A stretch of 64,000 nt of DNA from Utricularia gibba (GCA_002189035.1 NEEC01000004.1:124001-188000); one strand, 5' to 3'; shown: positions 47,527 to 61,103, counted from the first letter of the stretch. Notes: generated by a model not told the origin, from the letters alone. Numbers and translations are program-made.

Positions 47527-50500
47527 TCAATGCTCATCCCTGACCAAGTACACTTTTTGTCCATCTAAAATCATGTCGGCATCTAAAATCCTACCTCCAT
47601 CTTCAGACAATATACAGTACCCTACTCCACCTTGCATTTGCATCTCCTTTGAGGCTTCACTGATCATTTCTTGGATGGTCGGAGGAACCCAGATTACGAC
47701 GCCGATTCGTCTCTTGCCTTCCGCGTCCCATGGATGAAATGGAAACACCGTGCATTTCTTCTTCCCTTCTACTTTCTCCTCTGTAACTGATAACTGTGAT
47801 ATCTGAACCTTCCTCGCCTCTTCCAGTAGCTTAATCATGTTCCCGTTTCCAGATTTGTGGCCTTCTTCAAGTGGAGTATTACCCCATCTGTTTAATATTG
47901 TTGATTTTCAGTCGCAGATTTTACCTTTTTTTTTTTTAAGGAAAGGAAGTTGACGAAGACTTCACCTATCTTTAGAGAAAACGCTGGCACCTGCTTCAAC
48001 AAGCACCTTTGCTATCAAATGCATTCCATGAGAGGCAGCGATATGAAGTGGGGTTCGATTATCATAATCCTCTGAGTTGGGATCTACACCGTTTGCCAGC
48101 ATCCTCTTAAGCAAATCAGCGTCGCTTTGCGCTACAACTGAGCACAGATAGCTCCCTGCATTCTCAATCTTCAACAAAGCCCCTTGTTTTGAAAGTATAC
48201 TTGCAACTTTATCGTGCCCATTCTTGATCGCTTCTAGCAGAGGCGTGTTGCCAAAATTATCTGTTCATTTCAAAGAAGAACCAAACTTCAGGGTTTGTTG
48301 AGGGTGGCAAGTGAATGAAAAGGAGTTTCCACCTTCAGCGTTGAAGTCCACTCCTTCTTGTACGAGGAAAAGGGTAATAGCTTCATATCCCGTGATGCAG
48401 CCATGTGCTACAAGAAAAGTAGATCAAGTGATGAATTAGTTTTTTGAAGTTGCAGAAGTGGGCATATCTGTAACTAGCACTACCAAAGGTGTTCTTCCAT
48501 CATAATCCTTGTTGTTGGGATCTGCCCCGGCACGTATTAGTCTTTTTAGTTTATCGAGATCACCACAATAAGCCGTGTTGTTGACTTTCAGAGCCAACTC
48601 AGCCTCTTGTTTTCCAATGTGGAATGTGATATCAGACTCCAACTGCTTCACGCGAAGATTGGATTCTTTTTCCTGTACATTATGCAAAAGTAACTTGGTC
48701 ATGATCAAGTAGAACGTGTAGATCCATCATCTGCTGCTTGTTACTTTACCTCCAACAAGTTGGTGAGAACTCTCCGGCCGTCGTGAAAGTAGACCTCGAG
48801 AATGTTGGAGAAAGACATCTTATCGATCCGTAGGAGGCGACATAGTTCGCAAACACGAACTGTGTATGGCTGTGGAATGTTGCAAAGGATTGAGATCTCT
48901 CCAAATATGCTGCATGGTTCTAAGAGAGAGACTGTCTCTTCTGATCCATCTGTACCAGTTCCGACCTCCTCCTGGAAAGATTGACGACTTAAGCATGGAG
49001 GAATAGCACACGAAGAAGTTGAGAGCATGTCCCTTGACGTTACTAACCACAACTCCATGGCAAACTATGTATAGTTGCTCCACAGCATTTCCTTGTTCTA
49101 CTATCAGCTCCCCTGGTAGGAAAAACTCCTCATGCACCCGAGTGACCTGCACAATATTCATCATTATGGGGTGCATATAGATGCCGAGATGCGTGAACGA
49201 AGAGCAGCAGAATCAACTAACAATTTGGTTGATGAACTCAGAGGAGCAGCCTCTGAAGAGAGTAGCATTCTCAACGTATGACTTGTAAAGCGTTCGTGAA
49301 ATCTACAATGCAAATGATAAGGAACATTAGGAATCACAAGAAGTGGTGAAGCCGACAATGAAAGCTACGAATCACCTCTGCGCGAATGGAGATGGGAATA
49401 TCTTGCAGAACCGCAGGATCGGTGTAGTTGCACTCGTATTGTAGACGAAGGTGGCCTTTAATCTGATCACGGAGTTCCCTCCCTAGTCCATTTCTGTTCA
49501 TAAACTTGGTGAGATCTGTCATTCTGTCTCTAAACTTCTCTGTTTTAGACCCTTTCACTATCAAAGCAGTCATGTTTCCTATCAGATATGCACCCAGGAT
49601 CATATCAAATGAAACGAAAATCATCACGAATATCATCTCCCGCACATTAACAGCATGTATGTCTCCATATCCTGCATTTCAAAGTTATGATCAATACCTC
49701 ATTTTCATATTGCAATCAAGATTCATATGTCTAAAGCAACTCACCTACAGTAGCCATGGTGACTATAGCAAAGTACAAAGATGTGATGTACCGTTTCCAT
49801 AGATCAATATCCCTGAAGTTTGCATACGAGTAATCTCCCAGTTTCAAGCTGCCAATCCATGTGTATCCCTCCTTAGCTTGAGGGATCGTGGTAGCCAGAT
49901 AGTAAAAGATGCAAGCAGCCGTGTGTGTGCAATAGAGCTCCACCGCAATAAGCTTAGCTATCCTTGTGAAGAGATAATTGATTCGGATATCTTTCTCCAT
50001 CCTTTGTAGAAAGTTTGTCACTTTTCGAACTCGAGTCAGCCGTATCCATAGCATATATCTGATCTCTTCTTTCCTTCCAAAGTGCTGAAACAGTTGAGGT
50101 TATTCAACAAGCAAAGATCAGTAAGCTTTCGTAAGATTACAATCACTGACATATCAGTTACCTTGTAAATAATATCCCATGGCAGCAAACCGATGAAATC
50201 AGGGATGAAATGGGATCGAAGGTACCTGAATACCAACCAAAGAATTCATGAATCATGGATTGGAAGCTACAATCCTAGCTAAGCCATCTGAAAACGGAGA
50301 TTACCGGAGAGCTATTCTGTTGTGGTTGTAGACCATTTTGTAGGACTGGCTGTCTCTGTAAGTCACAAAAAACTGCAGGATTACGTCGACCAGGAAAGCC
50401 AGTTGAGCCGCATTATCAAGAAAGAAGAGCTTTCGCGGCAGTCCTCTGAAGAAACCAAACTCGAATGGAGTGAAGAAGGAAGAGTAAATCGCCCACAATA

Positions 50501-50871
50501 AGATAAACATATCCCATGCTTTGTACCACCTACAAAGATCATTTCAAGCAACTGGTACACATGGAAACATATTGAAAGAATCCCAAAAGGGTAACTGAAT
50601 AGCTTGCCCATCAGATTTACCAATTTTCGGGGTCGATGAATAAGCCTTGGGAGAAACCTCTAATCCCATTGAGAACCGAAACAGCACTAAACTTCCGGCG
50701 AATCCCCAACTCGTTCTCTATCAACGTGAGTTGGCTACCTCTTGATGATTTCAGCCGCTCTCTTACTTTCTCCACCACGAAATCCTCATTCAGGCCAATT
50801 TCGCCGGAACTCCCATCCTCGTCGTGTCTTCTGTTCACGGGGAACGTCATCGATTTCATGAAAAACCCCAT
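47527..50871 (-). CDS. SKOR: Shaker outward-rectifying K+ channel (SKOR/GORK clade), copy 1, canonical; apparent -1 frameshift at about 48390
   Basis: WYKAW, S4 IRLTRVRKV, MEKDIRINY, pore TMATVGYGDIHAVN, S6 SFDMILGAYLIGNMTALIV, CNBHD, ankyrin repeats, and a complete KHA domain (KKCTVFPFHPW...DGQKVYLV). Confidence 0.95.
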
Positions 50872-51059
50872 TTTATGGAGGCAACTGACCTATGGAGTGT
50901 TAGTTATACGTGATGACACCGGATCGTGGATTCAGGGGAATTGGTGAGGAAACCCGGCGACGATGCTCATCATATTTCGCGGGAAAAATGAAAAAGAAGA
51001 AAACGTTCTCTGTTTTCACGAGGCACTCACTCGCCCGTCACGAGACAGGTTGAAATGTC

Positions 51060-51145
51060 GTCGCCGGCGAAATGCGGTTGTGCGTAGACAGAGGATTCAT
51101 GAAGTAAAAATCAGCACCAACGGCTGCGATTTATATAGACGAGCA
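51060..51145 (-). promoter_or_regulatory. Core promoter of SKOR copy 1, homologous to 56640-56715 upstream of copy 2
   Basis: Both copies share GCGAAATGCGGT...GGATTCAT...AGTAAAA..CAGCACCA...TTATATAGACG, with a TATA box (TCTATATAA) on the minus strand. Confidence 0.6.
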
Positions 51146-53286
51146 GTCTTTGCCAGATATTGCATGTACCACCCCCTCATATTACTCGAAAATACGAAAT
51201 TAACCCCAGATCCAATCTGCCGCTTTTAGCTTTTAGCATGATCGACAATATTTTTTATGTTTTAATCAAGAAAAAAACCGGCGCTTAAAATACCAGAAAT
51301 AACCTTCCACCCTTTTCGCATCTCTGTATTTAGAAATTTAAAATTTATTATAAAAGCCATGGCATTTTATAAGGTATTAGACATATGATCACATGTGGGA
51401 TGGTATTCATATACTCCAAAGCTGATATTAATTATATTGTCAATTGTATAAAAAAAATATTATTATTTATACTTTTCATGAAAATTGTACAAAATATATT
51501 ATTTTATGTTATTTTTCGCAATCGTAAGTGACTCGGCTTGCGAGTGATCTCCCATTCCTAGAACAAAATCTTAGAAAATATCGCACCTAAGGGAGGAAAT
51601 TAAATTTCTGGGTACATTTTTTCTGGGAAAATTAATTAAAGGTGTTTCACTGAATTCAAACCCCGTTGACCAAATTGAAAATTCAAAAAACTGAAACAAA
51701 CGTAGCTAGGAACACGATACTAGGAAGGGGCCCATTACGAGTGACGTGTCCGATTCGTTGACATTTATCCTAAGCGCATCCCGACACGTAAAGGTGAAAA
51801 AAGCAAGTGTCTGAGGTGTCTCCTTTCGGTGTCAGCCACGTCGGCTCAACCGCTTTTGACTTTACAACTCTACCTGCTCCACCCATTGAGGCCCAAGTTT
51901 TGGAAACCGGGGCACCTCAAACCCGGTTCCTTTATGCGTGAATTATCCATCCACCATTTTTTTATTATTTTTTCAATCATTTGCCTTTTTTTATATTATT
52001 GCTTCAAATATTACTATAATGTATAGTATTATATTTATTATACCATGTGTTTTATAATTTCTAAAAAAAATACTATCAAACTTTCTTGGTTCTCATTTCT
52101 CCTAACATTTATATAATACGAAGTTATTACCCACTGCAAATAAGTTGAATAAACGACATGTGATTCCGTATGTTATGTGTGCGTTATGCATAGTATGCGT
52201 AGAATTAGTTCGATATGCTTTGATTGAATGTAAATAGACGGAATTTTTTTCGAAAAAAATGATACACTAAGAATGTCAATGAAAATAAAACTAGCTGTAA
52301 AGATCATCTTATACATCTCACTTTGGACGATTAGAAATCGAAGGAATAAACAAAGGTTTACCATAAACTAGTATACTTTAGTAGAGCTAATAAAAAAAAA
52401 AGTATAATTTATGAGTTACCAATAGATACAATTGCATAAAATTAATGTTTTTAAAAGACTAAGTTGATATGAATAGATAAATAATTCATTACATATTTTA
52501 GAAAATTGTATAGGATAAGTTTTTTCTTAAATTTTGTAATTCTATAAATATGTATCGAGCATTTTATTTAAAAAATTAATGATAAAAAACATAACAGGAA
52601 GTTTTTTAGTTTTATTTCTAGTTTAGTAAGGAATTCTGATTTGGGCGTGCCCCTGCAGGATTTTGTAAGGTACAAGATTCAATGCATGTAGTCTATGGTG
52701 CATGTGTCTCCGTACTTCAAGTACCTGCTTGTTCTTATCAACAAGTCAGCTTCCACGATACTTAGCCTCACGTATCGTGCAAAATGACACTAAAGGCACG
52801 CGAATCTGAATAATATTCACCTATTTACCGTACTTAAAATGTGAATATTCTCAAGGTTGACCTAATCTCATACTAACTGCGATTATTTAACTCCTATTTA
52901 TACACAATTTTCTCATTGTGGATGATATTTAATTAGTTTACATTTCCACCCCTGGTTTTCGGACTCCCGGGATTCGATCAACATCTCCGCCGCATCGGAA
53001 TGTTCCCCGGAAAAGATTCTGGTCAGCTTTTTCAGTTCAGACTTAGAAGTCTTATGCCCCAAATGAGTAAAGAAAAGATGACTACTGATATAATTTGATA
53101 CAAATTAAAGTACACTTTTTTTCTATATAATTATAAAATTAAAAAATATATACTTTATAATTTTGGAAATGGATGCAATGAATTAATTATCCATTTATAT
53201 GTGTTTATGCAATTAACGATGCACAAACTCAAATTTTACAAAGCGGGCTCACGGTTATGAGCTTTTCAACGCTTATCTATGGCCAA

Positions 53287-53445
53287 TCATCCCTTTTGGC
53301 CATCTACCATGATGTCAGCATCTAAAACCCTACCCACATTTTCACACTTTTATGATGTGTACTGACTGTTGCATTTCCATCTTCTTGGAAGCTTCGCTGA
53401 TCATCCCTTGGATGGTTGGAGGAACGCGCATTAGGATGCCGTTTT
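53287..53445 (-). pseudogene. Eroded KHA-domain relic of SKOR copy 2
   Basis: GILMRVPPTIQGMISEASKKMEMQ and ENVGRVLDADIMVDGQK align to the copy 1 KHA but lie in different frames, with an internal 2-nt loss and a 14-nt deletion. Confidence 0.8.
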
Positions 53446-56400
53446 CATGTTTTCTTCAACTTCCTCCTCCATAACTGATGCTTGAACTCTCCTTGCCTCA
53501 TCGAGTAGCTTTATCATGCGGGCGTTTCCTGATCTGTGGCCTTCTTCCAGTGGAGTATTACCCCATCTGTGTAATGTTTTGCATTTTCAGTTTGCAGATC
53601 CTGTTTTATTTCAAGGAAAGGAGGTTGAAGAAGACTTCACCTGTCTTTATTTAAAACACTGGCTCCTGCTTCGACAAGCACCTTGGCGATCGAAAGCATT
53701 CCTTGAGAGGCAGCAACATGAAGTGGGGTTCGACCATCGTAGTCCTCTGAGTTGGGGTCTGCGCCATTTGACACCATCCTTCGTAGCAAATCAACATCGC
53801 TTCGAGCAACCACTGAGCACAGGTAGCTCCCTGCATCTTCAATCTTCAACAAAGCCCCTTGTTTTGAAAGTATACTGGCAACCTTATCGTGCCCATTCTT
53901 GATGGCTTCTAGAAGTGGCGTGTTGCCGAAATTATCTATACAAAAGAACCAGGCTTCATGGCATGTTACACCTTCAGAGCAGAAAGTGAATGAAGCCAAC
54001 TTCCTTCAGTTCTCACCTTCAGCGTTGATGTTCACTCCTTCTTGTAACAGGAAAAGAGTGATTCCTTCATACCCTCGTGCTGCAGCCATATGCTGCACAT
54101 GAATAAAGTGTTAGGGCTCCTTCGACATCTTTATCTTGAAAGGTGGTAAAGAAACAGTGAATGATAGTACCAAAGGTGATCTTCCATCGTAGTCTTTTAT
54201 ATTGGGATCTCCTCCAGACCATATCAGTTTTTTAAGTTGATCAAGATCGCCGTTATGCGCTGCACTATTGACTCTAAAAGCCAGTTCGGCCTCCTGTCTC
54301 CCGAAGTGGGATGTGATATCGAGCTCCCGTTTGTCCTGGTGCAGATTATGCTATTATAGTTCATGATTATGTACTTGGAAAACTGTGCTTGTTGCTGGTA
54401 CCTCCAACAAGTTGGAGAGGACTTTACGGCCGTCGGGAAAGTAGATCTCCATAATGTTGGAGAAGGACATCTTATCGATGCGTAGGAGTCGACATAGTTC
54501 GCAAACACGAACCGTGTATGGCTGTGGAACGTTGCAGAGGACCGAAATTTCCCCGAATACGCAGAATGGTTCCAAGAGAGATACTATCTCTTCCGATCCA
54601 TTTGCTCCCGTCACAACTTCCTCCTGGAAAGATCCACAGCTCAAGAACTGATCAGCGAATGCTGATTCGGGTACAAAACCCGTTAACATTACTCACCAGA
54701 ACTCCATGACAAAGGATATATAGTTGCTCCACAGCGTTGCCTTGTTCTAGTATCACTTCACCTGGGAGGAAGAACTCCTCATGGACCCTTGTGACCTACG
54801 CAAGGTGACAGAATTTGAATGTCCACAGGTTCGAATAACCAGTATTCAGATACCCACCGGAAATACACTTACAATTTGGTTGATGAAGTCAGGGGAGCAG
54901 CCTCTGAAGAGAGGAACATTCTCAACATACGACTTGTACAGCGTACGTGAAATCTACAAGGCCAAAGATAACGAGATTAGAGAATTGATGAAACAGATGA
55001 ATGAAAACTAGGAACCACCTCTCCGCGAATGGAGATGGGCAGATCTTGAAGAACAGCAGGGTTGGTGTAGTTGCTTTCATATTGCAGACGGAGATGGCCT
55101 TTAATCTGCTTACGGAGCTCCCTCCTCAGCCTGTTTCTGTTGATGAACTTGATGATATCTGCAACTTTGTCTCTAAACTTCTCTGTTTTCGACCCTTTCA
55201 CTATCAAAGCAGTCATGTTCCCAACCAGATATGCACCAAGGATCATGTTAAACGAAAGGTAGATCATCGCGAATATCATCTCCCGCACGTTAACCGGATG
55301 CGCGTCTCCATACCCTGCAGTTACAGCACAAGTGGACCATATCATCCAATACTTGCACAAGTCAACTATATCTGCAAAACAACTCACCCACAGTTACCAT
55401 GGAGGCTATAGAGAAGTACAAGGATGTGATGTACCGTGTCCACAGATCGATTTTCCTGAAGTTTGTATATGAGTAGTCCCCCATCTTCAAGCTGCCGATC
55501 CATGTATACCCCTCCTTGTCTGGAGGAGGGTGGTGGCCAGATAGTAGAAGATGCAGGCAGCGGTGTGAGTGCAGTACAGCTCCACCACAATAAGCTTAAC
55601 TATCCTTGTGAATAGATAATTGATCCGAATATTCTTCTCCATCCTCTGCAGAAAGGTTATCAGCCTTCGAGATCGAGTCAGCCGTATCCAGAGCAGATAT
55701 CTGACCGCCTCTTTCCTTCCGAAGCTCTGAGTGAGAGCAAAGATCAGTAAGTTTGTCTTATGATTGCAGTCACGTACAGATCATGTACCTGGTATATAAT
55801 GTCCCAGGGCAGTAAACCAATCACATCTGGGATGAAATAGGATCGGAAGTACCTGAAGAAAGCAGAATAGTAATCGACTCTTCAGGGGGTTTAGTCTAAG
55901 TAAACCAGAGAGGAGTACCGGTGAGCTATTTTGTGGTGGTCATAGACCATTTTGTATGACTGGGAGTCTCTGAAAGTCACAAAAAATTGCAGGACTACGT
56001 CGACCAGGAAGACCAGTTGAGCTGCATTGTCAAGAAAGAAGACCTTCCGAGGCAGTCCTCTGAAGAACCCGAACTCGAATGGAGTGAAGAAGGAAGAGTA
56101 AATCGCCCATAGTAAAACTAACTTATCCCATGCTTTATACCGCCTATAAAAGATCATTTGAAGCAACTCATTCATGGAATGCAATTTCCGAGGACGCAAA
56201 CAAGGGTAGTGAAAAAATTGCAAGCAACGAAAAGTTAGAAATGGTCATGAGAAAATATGCAGCTTACCTGTCATCGGGTTCGATGAAAAAGCCGGTAATA
56301 ACTGGATCTTTACTGAACTTCCGGCGAATCCCTAACTCGTTCTCCATCACCGTGAGTTGGTCGCCTCTTGACGAGTGTATCTCTTCTCTTACTTCCTCCA

Positions 56401-56497
56401 CCACATAATCGTCTTCCCGGCCCCTTTCGCAGGAAATCTCATCGGCACCTTCTCCTCCGTTCACGGGAAACGTCATATTCTTCTTGAAAAACGCCAT
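53431..56497 (-). CDS. SKOR: Shaker K+ channel, SKOR/GORK clade, divergent tandem copy 2 (altered pore/S6, truncated or degenerate KHA); apparent -1 frameshift at about 55525
   Basis: Same exon structure as copy 1 with GT-AG sites intact. Filter TVGYGD, CNBHD and ankyrin repeats are retained. As assembled it stops at TAA 53431-53433. Functional status is not established. Confidence 0.85.
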
Positions 56498-57667
56498 TTT
56501 AAGGAAGAAAGCGAGTCGTATGGCGAATTCAGGTTAACTGTTGTCGAGGAAATCCGGCGACCACGGTCGTCATAGTTCGCCGGGAAATGTGATAGTGAAA
56601 AAAGCCTGCGCTTCACGCGAAAATGAAGTGGCTTGCCCAGCGAAATGCGGTGGTAGCCGTAGGATTCATTTGAGTAAAAGGCAGCACCATTTGCAGCAGT
56701 TATATAGACGACAGCAGCTCCCAGAAATTGCATGTAATTCCCCTCAAACCAATGAAAGTAACCGTAGAATCATACCAACGAACGCTTTGGATTTTTGTTT
56801 TCTTTTCTTGGTTTCACGTACTAAAAATAGTTTTTATATGATTATTTACGTTTTTTATTTATTATGACTCTCGTATTAGCAAAAGATTCCACGCTAGTCA
56901 ACCATATTAAACTATATTTTTAAAAATTACTTCAAATTTTATTTTACCAAAATTGAAATTCTTATAAAATTAATTAATATCTGGATTGTAAAAAACAAAA
57001 ATATATTCTTATAAATAAATAGCATATTTACTTATGTTCATTGGTAACCATATTTTATAAATTTATAAATATATGCATTACAAGTAATTTGTATTACAAT
57101 AATATTTTATAATCATATTTTATGTTATTACTATAGTTTAAATGTTTTAAAATTGGAATACAAAATTAAAGTACTAAATATTATAAAGTAAAGTAAATTT
57201 ATTACATTATTATCAATACAATAAACAATTTATTTACAAATTGATATTAATTTTAATTTTTTATAAAAGGAACATATATAATTATAAATTCATATATCAA
57301 ATCATTTTTTATAGAAAAGTCATCCTTTCATACTTTTACGTGAAGTGAATGCATTCTCAAAAATCAAGTTTTATAGAAGATAATTTAGTATACGCTTGAA
57401 ATGTAGAAATAATTTTATGAAAATAAAATTGATGATGAGAAATGAATTAATTTACAAACCTAGCATTAGTGAAATTAAAAATTTAAGAGTATAAAATCGT
57501 TTCTAAATATAAAATTGTCAGAAAATGACGCCCTGAGAAAAATATTATCCTAACGATTAAACCGTCGGGTACGGTAGATATTTTCCTGCCAATATAAAAA
57601 ACCCTAGACAACCCCCAGAAAAACCCTAACCCTACAATGAAAGCTTCCTTCCCCACCTCGTCCAGAT

Positions 57668-59348: not shown

Positions 59349-61103
59349 ATGGCCTTGCTCCTCTTCTTTCTCTTGATCGTTCTGTCAGTTTCTTCTGCTG
59401 ATGAAGGTTCGTTTCTGCCGTAACTTCAGCTCCCCTTTCTCTTCTGTGTTTTGCTTGTGGTCTTACGTAATGTGCTTCTTGTTGCATTGCAGAGGCTTTC
59501 ATTGGGGTGAACATTGGAACAGAGCTCTCGGATATGCCTCACCCCACACAAGTTGCTGAACTGCTGAAATCTCAACAGATTCGTCATGTACGCCTCTATA
59601 ACGCTGATAGGGGAATGCTTGTTGCTCTTGCCAACACAGGAATCAAGGTTTCAATTTCTGTGCCAAATGATGAACTTTTAGCTGTTGGGGATCCAATTCC
59701 TCAGCTGCGAATTGGGTTTCTCAGAACGTGGTCGCTCATTACCCTGCTACAAATATTACAACAATCTGTGTCGGTTCTGAGGTTCTGACATCTGCACCTC
59801 ATTTAGCTCCTGTCCTTGTGAACGCACACAGGTTCATACATTCAGCACTTGTGGCTTCAAATCTTGATCGAGAAATCAAAGTTTCAAGCCCTCTTGCTTC
59901 TTCCATTGTTCTGGACTCTTTCCCGCCTTCTCAAGCTTTCTTCAATCGTTCTTGGAACTCTGTTTTAGTCCCAATGCTTAGGTTTCTGCAGTCCACAGAT
60001 TCGTACTTCATGATCAATATTTATTCGTATTACGAATACATCCAATCCAATGGGATAATCCCATTGGATTATGCACTTTTGAAGTCTCTTCCTCCAAACA
60101 AAGAAGCTGTGGATGCAAATACACTGCTGCATTATACCAATGTCTTTGATGCTGTGGTGGATGCTGCTTACTTTGCAATGGCTGATCTTAACATCACCAA
60201 CGTCCCTGTTCTAGTGACTGAATCCGGTTGGCCGTCCAAAGGCGGTTCCAATGAGCCGGACGCGACCTTGGAGAATGCAGATACCTACAACAGCAATCTG
60301 ATCAGACATGTGCTTAACAAGACAGGAACTCCAAAGCATCCTGGTATTTCAGTTAGTGCTTATATCTATGAACTGTACAATGAGGACATGAAACCAGGGC
60401 CCCTGTCTGAGAAGAACTGGGGCTTGTTCGACGCAAATGGAGCTCCGGTTTACATCTTGCGGTTGGCTGGATCCGGCTCCGTGTTGGCAAATGACACTAC
60501 TCACCAGACTTATTGTACTGCAAGAGACGGGGTGGATTCAAGAATGCTCCAAGCTGCTCTGGATTGGGCTTGCGGACCTGGAAAAGTGGATTGCTCTCCT
60601 CTGTTACAGGGGCACCCCTGCTATGAACCGGATACCGTGGCCGCACACGCGACGTATGCATTCGATACGTATTATCATCAGTCCGGTAGGACTCCGGGGA
60701 CCTGTGATTTCAACGGGGCTGCTGCAGTCACTACCACCAATCCAAGTAGGCACAGCAAATGAAATCTTTATGTCGCTTTAGTTTCAGATTATGGGTAAGC
60801 TAATCCATCCCCAACGCATCATTTTTTCAGGCCATGGTTCCTGCATTTTCCCTGGAAGGTACACAGACTGGGATGTTTTCCATACCAGCAACAGGCATAC
60901 GGAATTCCATACAAACCTTTGGTACATTTCCTAATTCGTTTGCATCTTTGTGCAGCAGCAACCGCAACACGACCCTTTTGAGAAACAGCACCGCACCGGC
61001 ATCGGGTTTGAAAAGCTCTAGCTCACGGCCAGGGTTCTCCCAGGCATGCAGCACCTTGTACTTCGGCTTGATGGTTTCATGGATTGTTGCTGCAGCATTG
61101 TAG
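59349..61103 (+). CDS. Glucan endo-1,3-beta-glucosidase (GH17 + X8/CBM43, probably GPI-anchored); apparent -1 frameshift at about 59688
   Basis: Signal peptide, IGVNIGT, ICVGSEVL (acid/base Glu), VLVTESGWPS (nucleophile), IYELYNED, X8 domain YC.A...LQAALDWACG.G..DC, and a Ser-rich linker with hydrophobic C-terminal tail. Confidence 0.93.

What the first reader, a model, noticed from the sequence alone, without database searches (positions are those of the whole stretch)
55240..55430. Tandem SKOR paralog with inward-rectifier-like residues at the S6 gate and pore
Seen: copy 1 reads YFAIVTMATVGYGDIHAVN...SFDMILG, while copy 2 reads YFSIASMVTVGYGDAHPVN...SFNMILG (AAC at 55249-55247 versus GAT at 49606-49604 in copy 1). 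Established, from memory and to be verified: plant outward rectifiers (SKOR/GORK) carry D-M-I in S6 (SKOR D312-M313-I314), whereas inward rectifiers (AKT1, KAT1) carry N-L-G. AKT1 has YWS..GYGDLHPVN, and D312 substitutions in SKOR alter K+/voltage gating, with D312N plus L271P reported to give inward conduction. Copy 2 therefore has a natural D312N equivalent plus AKT1-like S and HPVN, while keeping the GYGD filter, the M286 equivalent, L271 (IDLW) and M-I. Inference: a duplicate that may have been rewired toward weak, inward or K+-insensitive rectification beside a canonical outward channel. If the host is a carnivorous Lentibulariaceae, this could relate to trap ion and water transport.
Basis: partly seen in the sequence, partly recalled or inferred. 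Interest (0 to 1): 0.82.

Follow-up and report, generated by a model that had tools for sequence, protein, structure and literature searches.

The report
Diverged SKOR potassium-channel duplicate, Asn at gate
A small Lamiales plant genome carries two side-by-side copies of an outward potassium-channel gene. The second copy is a real, expressed gene that has lost the aspartate used to sense external potassium, and also its tail domain, so it is a good but untested candidate for altered gating.

Summary
Copy 2 reads AAC (Asn) at 55249-55247 where copy 1 reads GAT (Asp) at 49606-49604. PDB alignments show this is SKOR D312, and that L271, K257 and M286 are kept.

The window shows a 1-bp frameshift in copy 2 between S5 and the pore helix. 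This is an assembly error: two DNA and two RNA runs all carry one extra base behind 55524. No run differs at the Asn codon.

Corrected, copy 2 is a 12-exon, 742-aa channel with S1-S6, a GYGD filter, C-linker, CNBD and ankyrin repeats. Every intron is spliced in RNA contigs. Its KHA tail is truly destroyed.

The two copies are sisters inside core Lamiales. Copy 2 evolves about 2.7 times faster but is still constrained (pairwise dN/dS 0.21; pN/pS 0.27 against a second accession). Its hits on otherwise invariant sites cluster around the pore helix and upper S6. Asp holds this position in about 284 of 294 outward-type homologues.

Different RNA samples hold each copy. Changed K+-dependent gating is plausible. 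Conversion to an inward rectifier is not supported, because L271 is kept and the L271P+D312N phenotype is disputed. No current has been measured. I rate it a new variant of a known kind, of moderate interest.

The parts
53431..56497 (-). Copy 2 coding region. It has 12 exons: 56497-56268, 56143-55919, 55852-55789, 55726-55388, 55314-55019, 54953-54873, 54795-54697, 54623-54402, 54335-54171, 54092-54017, 53935-53641, 53566-53431. It encodes 742 aa once the read-supported base is added.
   Evidence: All 11 introns appear as CT..AC joints in RNA contigs and were refined to GT-AG. Translation is. tblastn against P0008 is.
55247..55249 (-). AAC codon: Asn309 of copy 2, equivalent to SKOR D312, the first residue of the S6 gating domain.
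   Evidence: No variant in runs X1, X4, X5 or X7.
55524..55526 (-). Assembly error. The window has CC where the reads have CCC (minus strand). In the window this shifts the frame between S5 and the pore helix.
   Evidence: table 4: 'put in behind 55524: G' in every contig of X1, X4, X5 and X7. The corrected reading LATTLPPDKEGYTW matches homologues.
55388..55523 (-). S5-P linker and pore helix of copy 2. K257, L271, W272 and M286 equivalents are kept. A282S, V284A, T285S and A287V are changed (SKOR numbering).
55019..55314 (-). Exon 5: GYGD filter, AHPVN flank, S6 (SFNMILGAYLVGNMTA) and C-linker.
   Evidence: The best PDB match is the engineered L271P/D312N SKOR (8jec, 8wui), just above wild type.
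53230..53430 (-). Remnant of the KHA domain, now downstream of the stop codon (53433-53431). It is broken by several deletions, including about 46 nt that removed the KKCTVFPFHPWDAEGKRRIGVV stretch, and by in-frame stops.
   Evidence: DNA alignment to copy 1. Pfam KHA scores 18.5 bits, below the 29.6 cut-off, against 70.8 bits in copy 1. The RNA contig X5 record 9 and the DNA contig X4 record 4 match the window here without gaps.
55388..55434 (-). 47 nt that are skipped when a cryptic donor (CG|GTAC at 55434) is used. This removes the pore helix and gives a premature stop.
   Evidence: table 5: X5 has the joint 55313->55434 (skips 120), while X7 has the canonical 55313->55387 (skips 73).
47527..50871 (-). 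Copy 1 coding region: 12 exons, 832 aa, a canonical SKOR-type channel with D-M-I and a full KHA domain.
   Evidence: Pfam KHA E 9e-20.
49604..49606 (-). GAT codon: the Asp of copy 1 that corresponds to SKOR D312.
48389..48391 (-). GGG run in copy 1 exon 10 (ankyrin). One base appears to be missing compared with copy 2 and all homologues. This is probably another homopolymer assembly error and was not checked with reads.
56527..56736 (-). Proximal upstream region of copy 2. It is the only upstream stretch still alignable to copy 1 (50930-51168, about 73% identity). Nothing further upstream or downstream of the genes aligns.

Best explanation
Copy 2 is a live gene and not a pseudogene. It arose by a tandem duplication specific to this Lamiales lineage from a SKOR-type outward-rectifying Shaker K+ channel gene. 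Since then it has kept an open, correctly spliced 742-aa frame (S1-S6, GYGD, C-linker, CNBD, ankyrin) under purifying selection, although more relaxed than in copy 1. It has lost the C-terminal KHA domain. It has also collected substitutions at otherwise invariant positions in one structural module: the base of the pore helix, the filter flank and the upper S6. These include D312N, which removes one of the three charges specific to outward channels and a residue of the external-K+ sensor. Inferred mechanism: the subunit still forms a K+-selective, depolarisation-activated pore, because the S4 charges, E225, K257, L271, M286, M313-I314 and GYGD are all kept. The coupling between pore occupancy and the S6 gate is changed. 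That would weaken or shift the dependence of activation on external K+, so the channel may open at voltages where a normal SKOR stays shut. Copy 2 appears in different RNA samples from copy 1, so the pair also looks partitioned by expression. Shown here: the sequence, the reads, splicing, selective constraint, rarity of Asn, clustering of changes, and loss of KHA. Inferred: every statement about gating.
For: All four runs agree on Asn and restore the reading frame. All 11 introns are spliced in RNA contigs, giving a 742-aa ORF. Pairwise dN/dS is 0.215 at dS 0.575, and it is 0.15-0.22 in the TM, CNBD and ANK regions. Against a second accession about 1% divergent there are 15 synonymous and 14 nonsynonymous differences, so pN/pS is 0.27, with binomial p 5e-4 against neutrality. 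The copies are sisters at 100/100 support, with branch lengths 0.12 and 0.33. A relative-rate count gives 21 versus 57 unique changes, p 5e-5. At 267 sites conserved in at least 97% of 135 homologues, 17 changed only in copy 2 and 4 only in copy 1. Seven of the 17 lie within 28 sites of residues 279-317, with scan permutation p 0.029. Asp is near-universal at this position. D312 belongs to the K+ sensor and S6 gating domain, which interacts with the pore region (PMC12318183, PMC6435592). It lies near E225 (PMC11211230). GORK lacking KHA, or lacking ANK plus KHA, is fully functional (PMC11861651). The RNA samples holding each copy are complementary.
Against: No current has been recorded for this protein, and the effect of D312N alone could not be read from a primary source here (Li 2008 is not held; Johansson 2006 is not in the library). 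Copy 2 evolves faster and hits invariant pore positions, which also fits partial decay. The post hoc pore window inflates the Fisher p, and the unbiased scan p is only 0.029. One RNA run assembles a mis-spliced isoform with a premature stop. KHA has been reported as important for K-out assembly (Dreyer 2004, cited in PMC6435592). No orthologue from another species was found to show that Asn is conserved. The expression evidence is only presence in contigs of coded samples and is not quantitative.
Confidence: 0.55

Rival explanations
1. Copy 2 is functionally an ordinary outward rectifier. Asn and the neighbouring changes compensate for each other or are tolerated. The copy is retained only because its expression was partitioned from copy 1.
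For: Different RNA samples hold each copy, and the upstream regions are unalignable beyond about 300 nt. All other outward-type signatures are kept. Overall dN/dS is low.
Against: [quoted passage not shown] Seven further near-invariant positions in the same module have changed.
Confidence: 0.2
2. Copy 2 is a decaying duplicate. It is transcribed but non-conducting or non-assembling, on its way to becoming a pseudogene.
For: KHA is destroyed. The protein branch is 2.7 times faster. Copy 2 alone has 17 hits on near-invariant sites. One RNA run carries an isoform with a premature stop. One laboratory found SKOR L271P/D312N non-functional (PMC10313817).
Against: The frameshift seen in the window is an assembly artefact. 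No stop or frameshift occurs in 742 codons despite dS 0.575. dN/dS is about 0.2-0.3 and pN/pS is 0.27, both significantly below 1. The ankyrin and CNBD regions are as constrained as the pore. GORK works without KHA (PMC11861651).
Confidence: 0.13
3. Copy 2 has become a hyperpolarisation-activated inward rectifier, the strongest form of the first reader's idea.
For: S, HPVN and N match the inward-type consensus. L271P+D312N SKOR and the equivalent GORK mutant conduct inward in one laboratory (PMC11211230).
Against: L271 and W272 are kept, and L271P is regarded as the key change (PMC11211230). M-I has not become L-G. E225, K257 and the F of YF are still outward-type. The double mutant was non-functional in another laboratory (PMC10313817). 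Phylogeny places copy 2 firmly in the SKOR clade. Six of the nine pore changes are not toward inward-type residues.
Confidence: 0.05
4. Copy 2 is a modulatory subunit that works mainly in heteromers with copy 1 and tunes their K+ sensing or voltage threshold. This would parallel what KC1 does for inward channels.
For: It is a tandem partner with a conserved tetramer-forming core. Its gate module is altered. X7 and X11 hold both transcripts.
Against: The two copies appear mostly in different RNA samples. Loss of KHA may weaken assembly (Dreyer 2004, via PMC6435592). There is no direct evidence.
Confidence: 0.07

Closest known systems
Arabidopsis SKOR / GORK (plant Shaker group V outward rectifiers; PDB 8jet, 8wtz, 8wfz)
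   Same: The exon peptides are about 75-85% identical. The domain order S1-S6, GYGD, C-linker, CNBD, ANK is the same. E225, K257, L271, M286 and M313-I314 are kept. Copy 2 sits in the SKOR clade within Lamiales.
   Different: Asn replaces D312. The pore helix reads FSIASMVTV instead of FAIVTMATV. The filter flank reads AHPVN instead of IHAVN. D208N in the S4-S5 region is also changed. The KHA domain is absent.
Engineered SKOR L271P/D312N (SKDM or SKORmut; PDB 8wui, 8jec)
   Same: It carries the same Asn in SFNMILG and is the top-scoring PDB sequence for copy 2 exon 5.
   Different: Copy 2 keeps Leu at 271. The mutant's phenotype is disputed: inward in PMC11211230, non-functional in PMC10313817.
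Other natural outward-type paralogues without Asp at this position: Apostasia KOR2 (N-T-I), a Malus paralogue cluster (N-M-I), grass KOR2-like (S-I-L), Castilleja P0031 (V-M-I)
   Same: They are divergent duplicates of outward-type channels that have lost the sensor Asp.
   Different: They are independent lineages. I found no functional study of any of them. The Malus models lack part of the pore helix. Copy 2 additionally lacks KHA.
AKT1 / KAT1 inward rectifiers (PDB 7fcv, 6v1x)
   Same: They share Ser in the Y-x-S pore-helix position, HPVN (AKT1-type), and Asn at the S6 position.
   Different: They have N-L-G rather than N-M-I, YW rather than YF and TLTT rather than SMVT, and they lack the E225 and K257 equivalents. 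Identity to copy 2 exons is far lower (E 1e-18 against 1e-45).

Membership tests
Plant Shaker outward-rectifier (SKOR/GORK) channels | Phylogenetic placement inside the SKOR/GORK clade | tested here: met
   In an ML tree of 34 sequences, copy 1 and copy 2 are sisters (100/100) within core Lamiales SKORs. The best PDB hits are SKOR and GORK.
Plant Shaker outward-rectifier (SKOR/GORK) channels | S1-S6 with a basic S4 and a GYGD selectivity filter | tested here: met
   The full-length translation aligns throughout. Pfam Ion_trans hits on single exon peptides are weak (E 3e-4 to 7e-4, 19-21 bits, below the 25-bit cut-off). GYGD and the S4 motif RYLLWIRLTRSRR are present.
Plant Shaker outward-rectifier (SKOR/GORK) channels | S6 gating domain D-M-I (SKOR 312-314) | tested here: not met
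   Copy 2 has N-M-I and copy 1 has D-M-I.
Plant Shaker outward-rectifier (SKOR/GORK) channels | Three outward-specific charges: E225, K257, D312 (PMC12318183) | tested here: inconclusive
   E222 and K254 of copy 2 correspond to E225 and K257 and are kept. D312 is lost. So two of three are present.
Plant Shaker outward-rectifier (SKOR/GORK) channels | C-linker, CNBD and ankyrin repeats | tested here: met
   Pfam cNMP_binding E 2e-10 and Ank E 8e-17 on copy 2 exons.
Plant Shaker outward-rectifier (SKOR/GORK) channels | C-terminal KHA domain | tested here: not met
   Copy 2 stops at ...EENMKTAS. The out-of-frame remnant scores 18.5 bits, below the 29.6 cut-off. Copy 1 scores 70.8 bits.
Plant Shaker outward-rectifier (SKOR/GORK) channels | Depolarisation-activated outward K+ current dependent on external K+ | not testable with these tools
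   This needs electrophysiology.
Plant Shaker inward rectifiers (AKT1/KAT1 type) | N-L-G in S6, Y-W-S-I-T-T-L-T-T pore helix, clade membership | tested here: not met
   Only N, S and HPVN match. M-I, YF and SMVT do not. The tree and E-values place copy 2 with SKOR.
Pseudogene | Disabling frameshift or stop, no constraint, no proper transcript | tested here: not met
   The only core frameshift is an assembly error. dN/dS is 0.21 and pN/pS is 0.27. Spliced RNA contigs exist. Only the KHA tail is pseudogenised.

The most novel reading that the evidence does not exclude
Copy 2 is a naturally evolved outward-type Shaker channel that has uncoupled gating from external K+. It could act alone as a weakly rectifying or bidirectional K+ pathway, or as a KC1-like modulatory partner of copy 1. 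It would be used in a tissue different from the canonical SKOR, in an aquatic, probably carnivorous, plant. That would make it the first natural counterpart of the laboratory D312 mutants.
Probability: 0.15. Interest if true: 0.75.

Novelty: new variant of a known kind. Interest (0 to 1): 0.45.

Why it matters
How plant outward rectifiers sense external K+, and what sets rectification polarity, is still argued from engineered mutants, and the published results conflict. A natural, selectively maintained SKOR paralogue would be a ready-made test case. It carries Asn at the sensor Asp, eight neighbouring changes at the pore-helix/S6 interface, and no KHA tail. Recordings of it, and of its Asn-to-Asp revertant, would show which natural combinations of residues tolerate loss of D312 and what that does to K+-dependent gating. 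The finding also carries a practical warning. This assembly contains single-base homopolymer errors that mimic pseudogenes.

Tried and rejected
1. Pseudogene reading. The window's frameshift (stop after 252 codons) first suggested a dead gene. Reads rejected this.

2. Reaching copy 2's nearest relatives.
- An alignment of P0182 with all exon peptides was badly misaligned by MAFFT and was discarded (A1).
- A cleaner alignment (A2) was searched but returned only general Lamiales and angiosperm SKORs, with no Lentibulariaceae entry.
- A search with exon 5 alone found nothing above 78% identity.
- So whether Asn is conserved in sister species remains unknown.

3. The primary paper on single SKOR mutations (PMC2268552) is not held. 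Johansson 2006 is not in the library. The single-mutant effect of D312N therefore rests on how later papers describe it.

4. No branch-specific codon model was run, because no outgroup CDS was fetched. Branch omegas (about 0.12 for copy 1 and 0.32 for copy 2) are rough. They come from splitting the pairwise dN by the protein branch lengths and assuming equal dS.

6. Enrichment of copy 2 hits across the whole S5-P-S6 block is weak (7 of 80 against 10 of 187 elsewhere). Only the narrower pore-helix-to-upper-S6 window stands out.

7. A literature search for Utricularia together with SKOR found nothing relevant.

Full report
**Observation.** On the minus strand, copy 2 reads YITSLYFSIASMVTV / GYGDAHPVNVREMIFAMIYLSFNMILG, with AAC at 55249-55247. 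Copy 1 reads YITSLYFAIVTMATV / GYGDIHAVNVREMIFVMIFVSFDMILG, with GAT at 49606-49604. Alignments to solved structures fix the numbering:
- the first residue of exon 5 in frame is SKOR Y291, so the Asn/Asp position is 312, followed by M313-I314;
- in the preceding exon the equivalents of K257, L271, W272 and M286 are all present in copy 2.

The best PDB match to copy 2's exon 5 is the engineered SKOR L271P/D312N (8jec, 8wui), just above wild type.

**A frameshift that is not real.** As assembled, copy 2 has a 1-bp frameshift between S5 and the pore helix (LATTLLQTRRGIHGSAA*). That truncates the protein after 252 codons. I laid contigs of two DNA runs (X1, probably the source sample, and X4, a 2019 sample about 1% divergent) and two RNA runs (X5, X7) on 53200-56700. 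Every contig carries one extra G behind 55524 on the + strand. This was the only indel reported. It turns CC into CCC on the coding strand and restores LATTLPPDKEGYTW, the homologue consensus. No run shows any difference at 55247-55249. The Asn codon is therefore real, and the frameshift is a homopolymer assembly error.

**Gene models.** RNA contigs give CT..AC joints at all 11 introns of copy 2, which I refined to GT-AG.
- Copy 2: the corrected CDS runs 56497 to 53431, has 12 exons and encodes 742 aa.
- Copy 1: it runs 50871 to 47527, has 12 homologous exons and encodes 832 aa. This needs one base added in a GGG run at 48391-48389, where the assembly again appears one base short compared with copy 2 and all homologues. 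I could not check that site with reads.

Pfam finds cNMP_binding and ankyrin repeats in copy 2's exons. KHA is full in copy 1 (70.8 bits), but copy 2 has only an out-of-frame fragment of 18.5 bits, below the cut-off. A DNA alignment of the last exons shows several deletions in copy 2. One of about 46 nt removed the start of KHA. The new stop follows ...EENMKTAS, and further indels and stops lie in the remnant. RNA and DNA contigs match the window there without gaps, so the KHA loss is genuine. This agrees with an earlier first-stage note on the same window.

**Origin and rate.**
- In an ML tree with 32 SKOR-type proteins, the two copies are sisters (100/100) within core Lamiales. The shared stem is long (0.27). 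Terminal branches are 0.12 for copy 1 and 0.33 for copy 2.
- At sites where at least 7 of 8 outgroups agree, copy 1 alone changed at 21, copy 2 alone at 57, and both at 66. Tajima chi-square is 16.6, p 5e-5.
- Only about 240 nt of proximal upstream sequence still aligns between the copies.

**Constraint.**
- Pairwise dN/dS is 0.215 at dS 0.575. By region it is 0.22 in S1-S4, 0.15 in S5-P-S6, 0.17 in C-linker plus CNBD and 0.18 in ANK.
- Splitting dN by the protein branch lengths gives roughly 0.12 for copy 1 and 0.32 for copy 2. This is an inference, not a fitted model.
- Against accession X4, copy 2 shows 15 synonymous and 14 nonsynonymous differences. pN/pS is 0.27, and a binomial test against neutrality gives p 5e-4.
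- An open frame of 742 codons kept at this divergence, together with correct splicing, argues strongly against a pseudogene.

**Where copy 2 changed.** I took 267 sites conserved in at least 97% of 135 full-length outward-type homologues.
- 17 changed only in copy 2 and 4 only in copy 1.
- Seven of the 17 fall within the 28 such sites of residues 279-317. In SKOR numbering these are A282S, T285S, A287V, A296P, V309L, D312N and I320V.
- At the looser criterion of at least 7 of 8 outgroups agreeing, V284A and I294A also fall in this window.
- Fisher p is 6e-4 for that post hoc window. A window-free scan permutation gives p 0.029.
- This is the base of the pore helix, the filter flank and the upper S6. 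Reviews describe this interface as coupling pore occupancy to the S6 gating domain D312-M313-I314 in K+-dependent gating (PMC6435592). [quoted passage not shown]
- A second conserved acid, D208 in MEKDIRINY, is also Asn in copy 2.

**How rare Asn is.**
- Among 197 sequences with the outward-type S6 motif, 189 have Asp. Among 97 matched fragments, 95 do.
- Asn occurs only in a Malus paralogue cluster with an incomplete pore helix, and in Apostasia KOR2 (N-T-I).
- Grass KOR2-like proteins have S-I-L, and a Castilleja protein has V-M-I.
- None of the outward-type sequences surveyed has AHPVN after GYGD.
- Inward-type representatives typically read YWSITTLTTVGYGDLHPVN/AEN...NLG. So three of copy 2's nine pore-module changes (S, P, N) go toward the inward consensus and six do not.

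**Expression.**
- RNA runs X5 and X7 hold spliced copy 2 contigs.
- Within one 2020 study, copy 2 is held by X5, X9, X10 and weakly X11. Copy 1 is held by X17, X18, X19 and X11.
- The two sets are almost complementary, which suggests expression partitioning. The samples are coded and the measure is only presence in contigs.
- In X5 the assembled transcript uses a cryptic donor at 55434. This removes 47 nt (the pore helix) and gives a premature stop. X7 uses the canonical donor.

**Mechanism.**
- L271P+D312N converts SKOR, and the equivalent pair converts GORK, to inward conduction in one study. That study attributes the key role to L271P and places D312 next to E225 (PMC11211230).
- Another study found the same double mutant non-functional (PMC10313817).
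- Replacing D-M-I by N-L-G abolishes outward rectification (Poree 2005, as cited in PMC12318183).
- Copy 2 keeps L271, W272, M313-I314, E225, K257, M286, the S4 charges and GYGD.
- GORK truncated before KHA, or before ANK, is fully functional (PMC11861651), so KHA loss need not be disabling. Earlier work linked KHA to assembly (Dreyer 2004, cited in PMC6435592).

My best reading is a working K+ channel subunit whose dependence on external K+, or whose activation threshold, has been altered, and which is expressed apart from its canonical neighbour. The alternatives are:
- ordinary function with partitioned expression;
- partial decay;
- a modulatory heteromer partner;
- true inward rectification, the least likely.

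**Host.** The tools code the organism name. The evidence is tiny introns (62-124 nt), about 95 Mb of genome contigs, placement in core Lamiales on a long branch, and an earlier follow-up note calling it a compact Lamiales genome. All of this is compatible with a bladderwort such as Utricularia gibba, but that is an inference. No link to trap physiology was tested.

**Verdict.** This is a new variant of a known channel kind, and a good candidate for electrophysiology. It is of moderate interest until currents are measured.

Noticed in passing
window 55524-55526 and 48389-48391: The assembly has single-base homopolymer deletions inside coding exons. The first is proven by four runs. The second, in copy 1's ankyrin exon, is inferred from homology only. 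Apparent frameshifts elsewhere in this genome should not be read as pseudogenes without reads.
   Followed up: partly
window 55388-55434: RNA run X5 assembles copy 2 with a cryptic GT donor 47 nt upstream of the normal one. This deletes the pore helix and creates a premature stop. Run X7 has the normal junction. Copy 1 has the same cryptic CGGTAC sequence.
   Followed up: partly
runs X5, X9, X10 versus X17, X18, X19 (one 2020 RNA study): The samples that hold copy 2 transcripts and those that hold copy 1 transcripts barely overlap. Only X11, and the 2017 run X7, hold both. This suggests tissue or condition partitioning. The sample labels are coded.
   Followed up: partly
proteins P0182 and P0232 (Penstemon davidsonii, adjacent locus tags RD792_013135 and RD792_013136): Another Lamiales species also has a tandem SKOR pair. 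Its copies are 98% identical and both carry Asp, so it is an independent and recent duplication.
   Followed up: partly
proteins P0042 (Apostasia KOR2, N-T-I), P0016 cluster (Malus, N-M-I), P0028 cluster (Sorghum and Miscanthus KOR2-like, S-I-L), P0031 (Castilleja, V-M-I): Several plant lineages have divergent outward-type paralogues that lack the sensor Asp. The grass KOR2 clade looks like a conserved case worth its own study.
   Followed up: partly
window 55880-55883 region: codon 205 of copy 2 (MEKNIRINY): A second near-invariant Asp, the SKOR D208 equivalent at the end of S4 / the S4-S5 region, is also Asn in copy 2. I found no literature on this residue.
   Followed up: no
window 59728-60762 (+): An uninterrupted 344-aa ORF encodes a glycosyl hydrolase family 17 domain plus an X8 domain (a beta-1,3-glucanase type), just upstream of copy 2.
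   Followed up: partly
window 53200-56700, accession X4: Some X4 variants carry the ancestral residue where the window's copy 2 is derived (for example G350 and A384). Part of copy 2's divergence is therefore recent and still polymorphic. Asn309 is shared by both accessions.
   Followed up: partly
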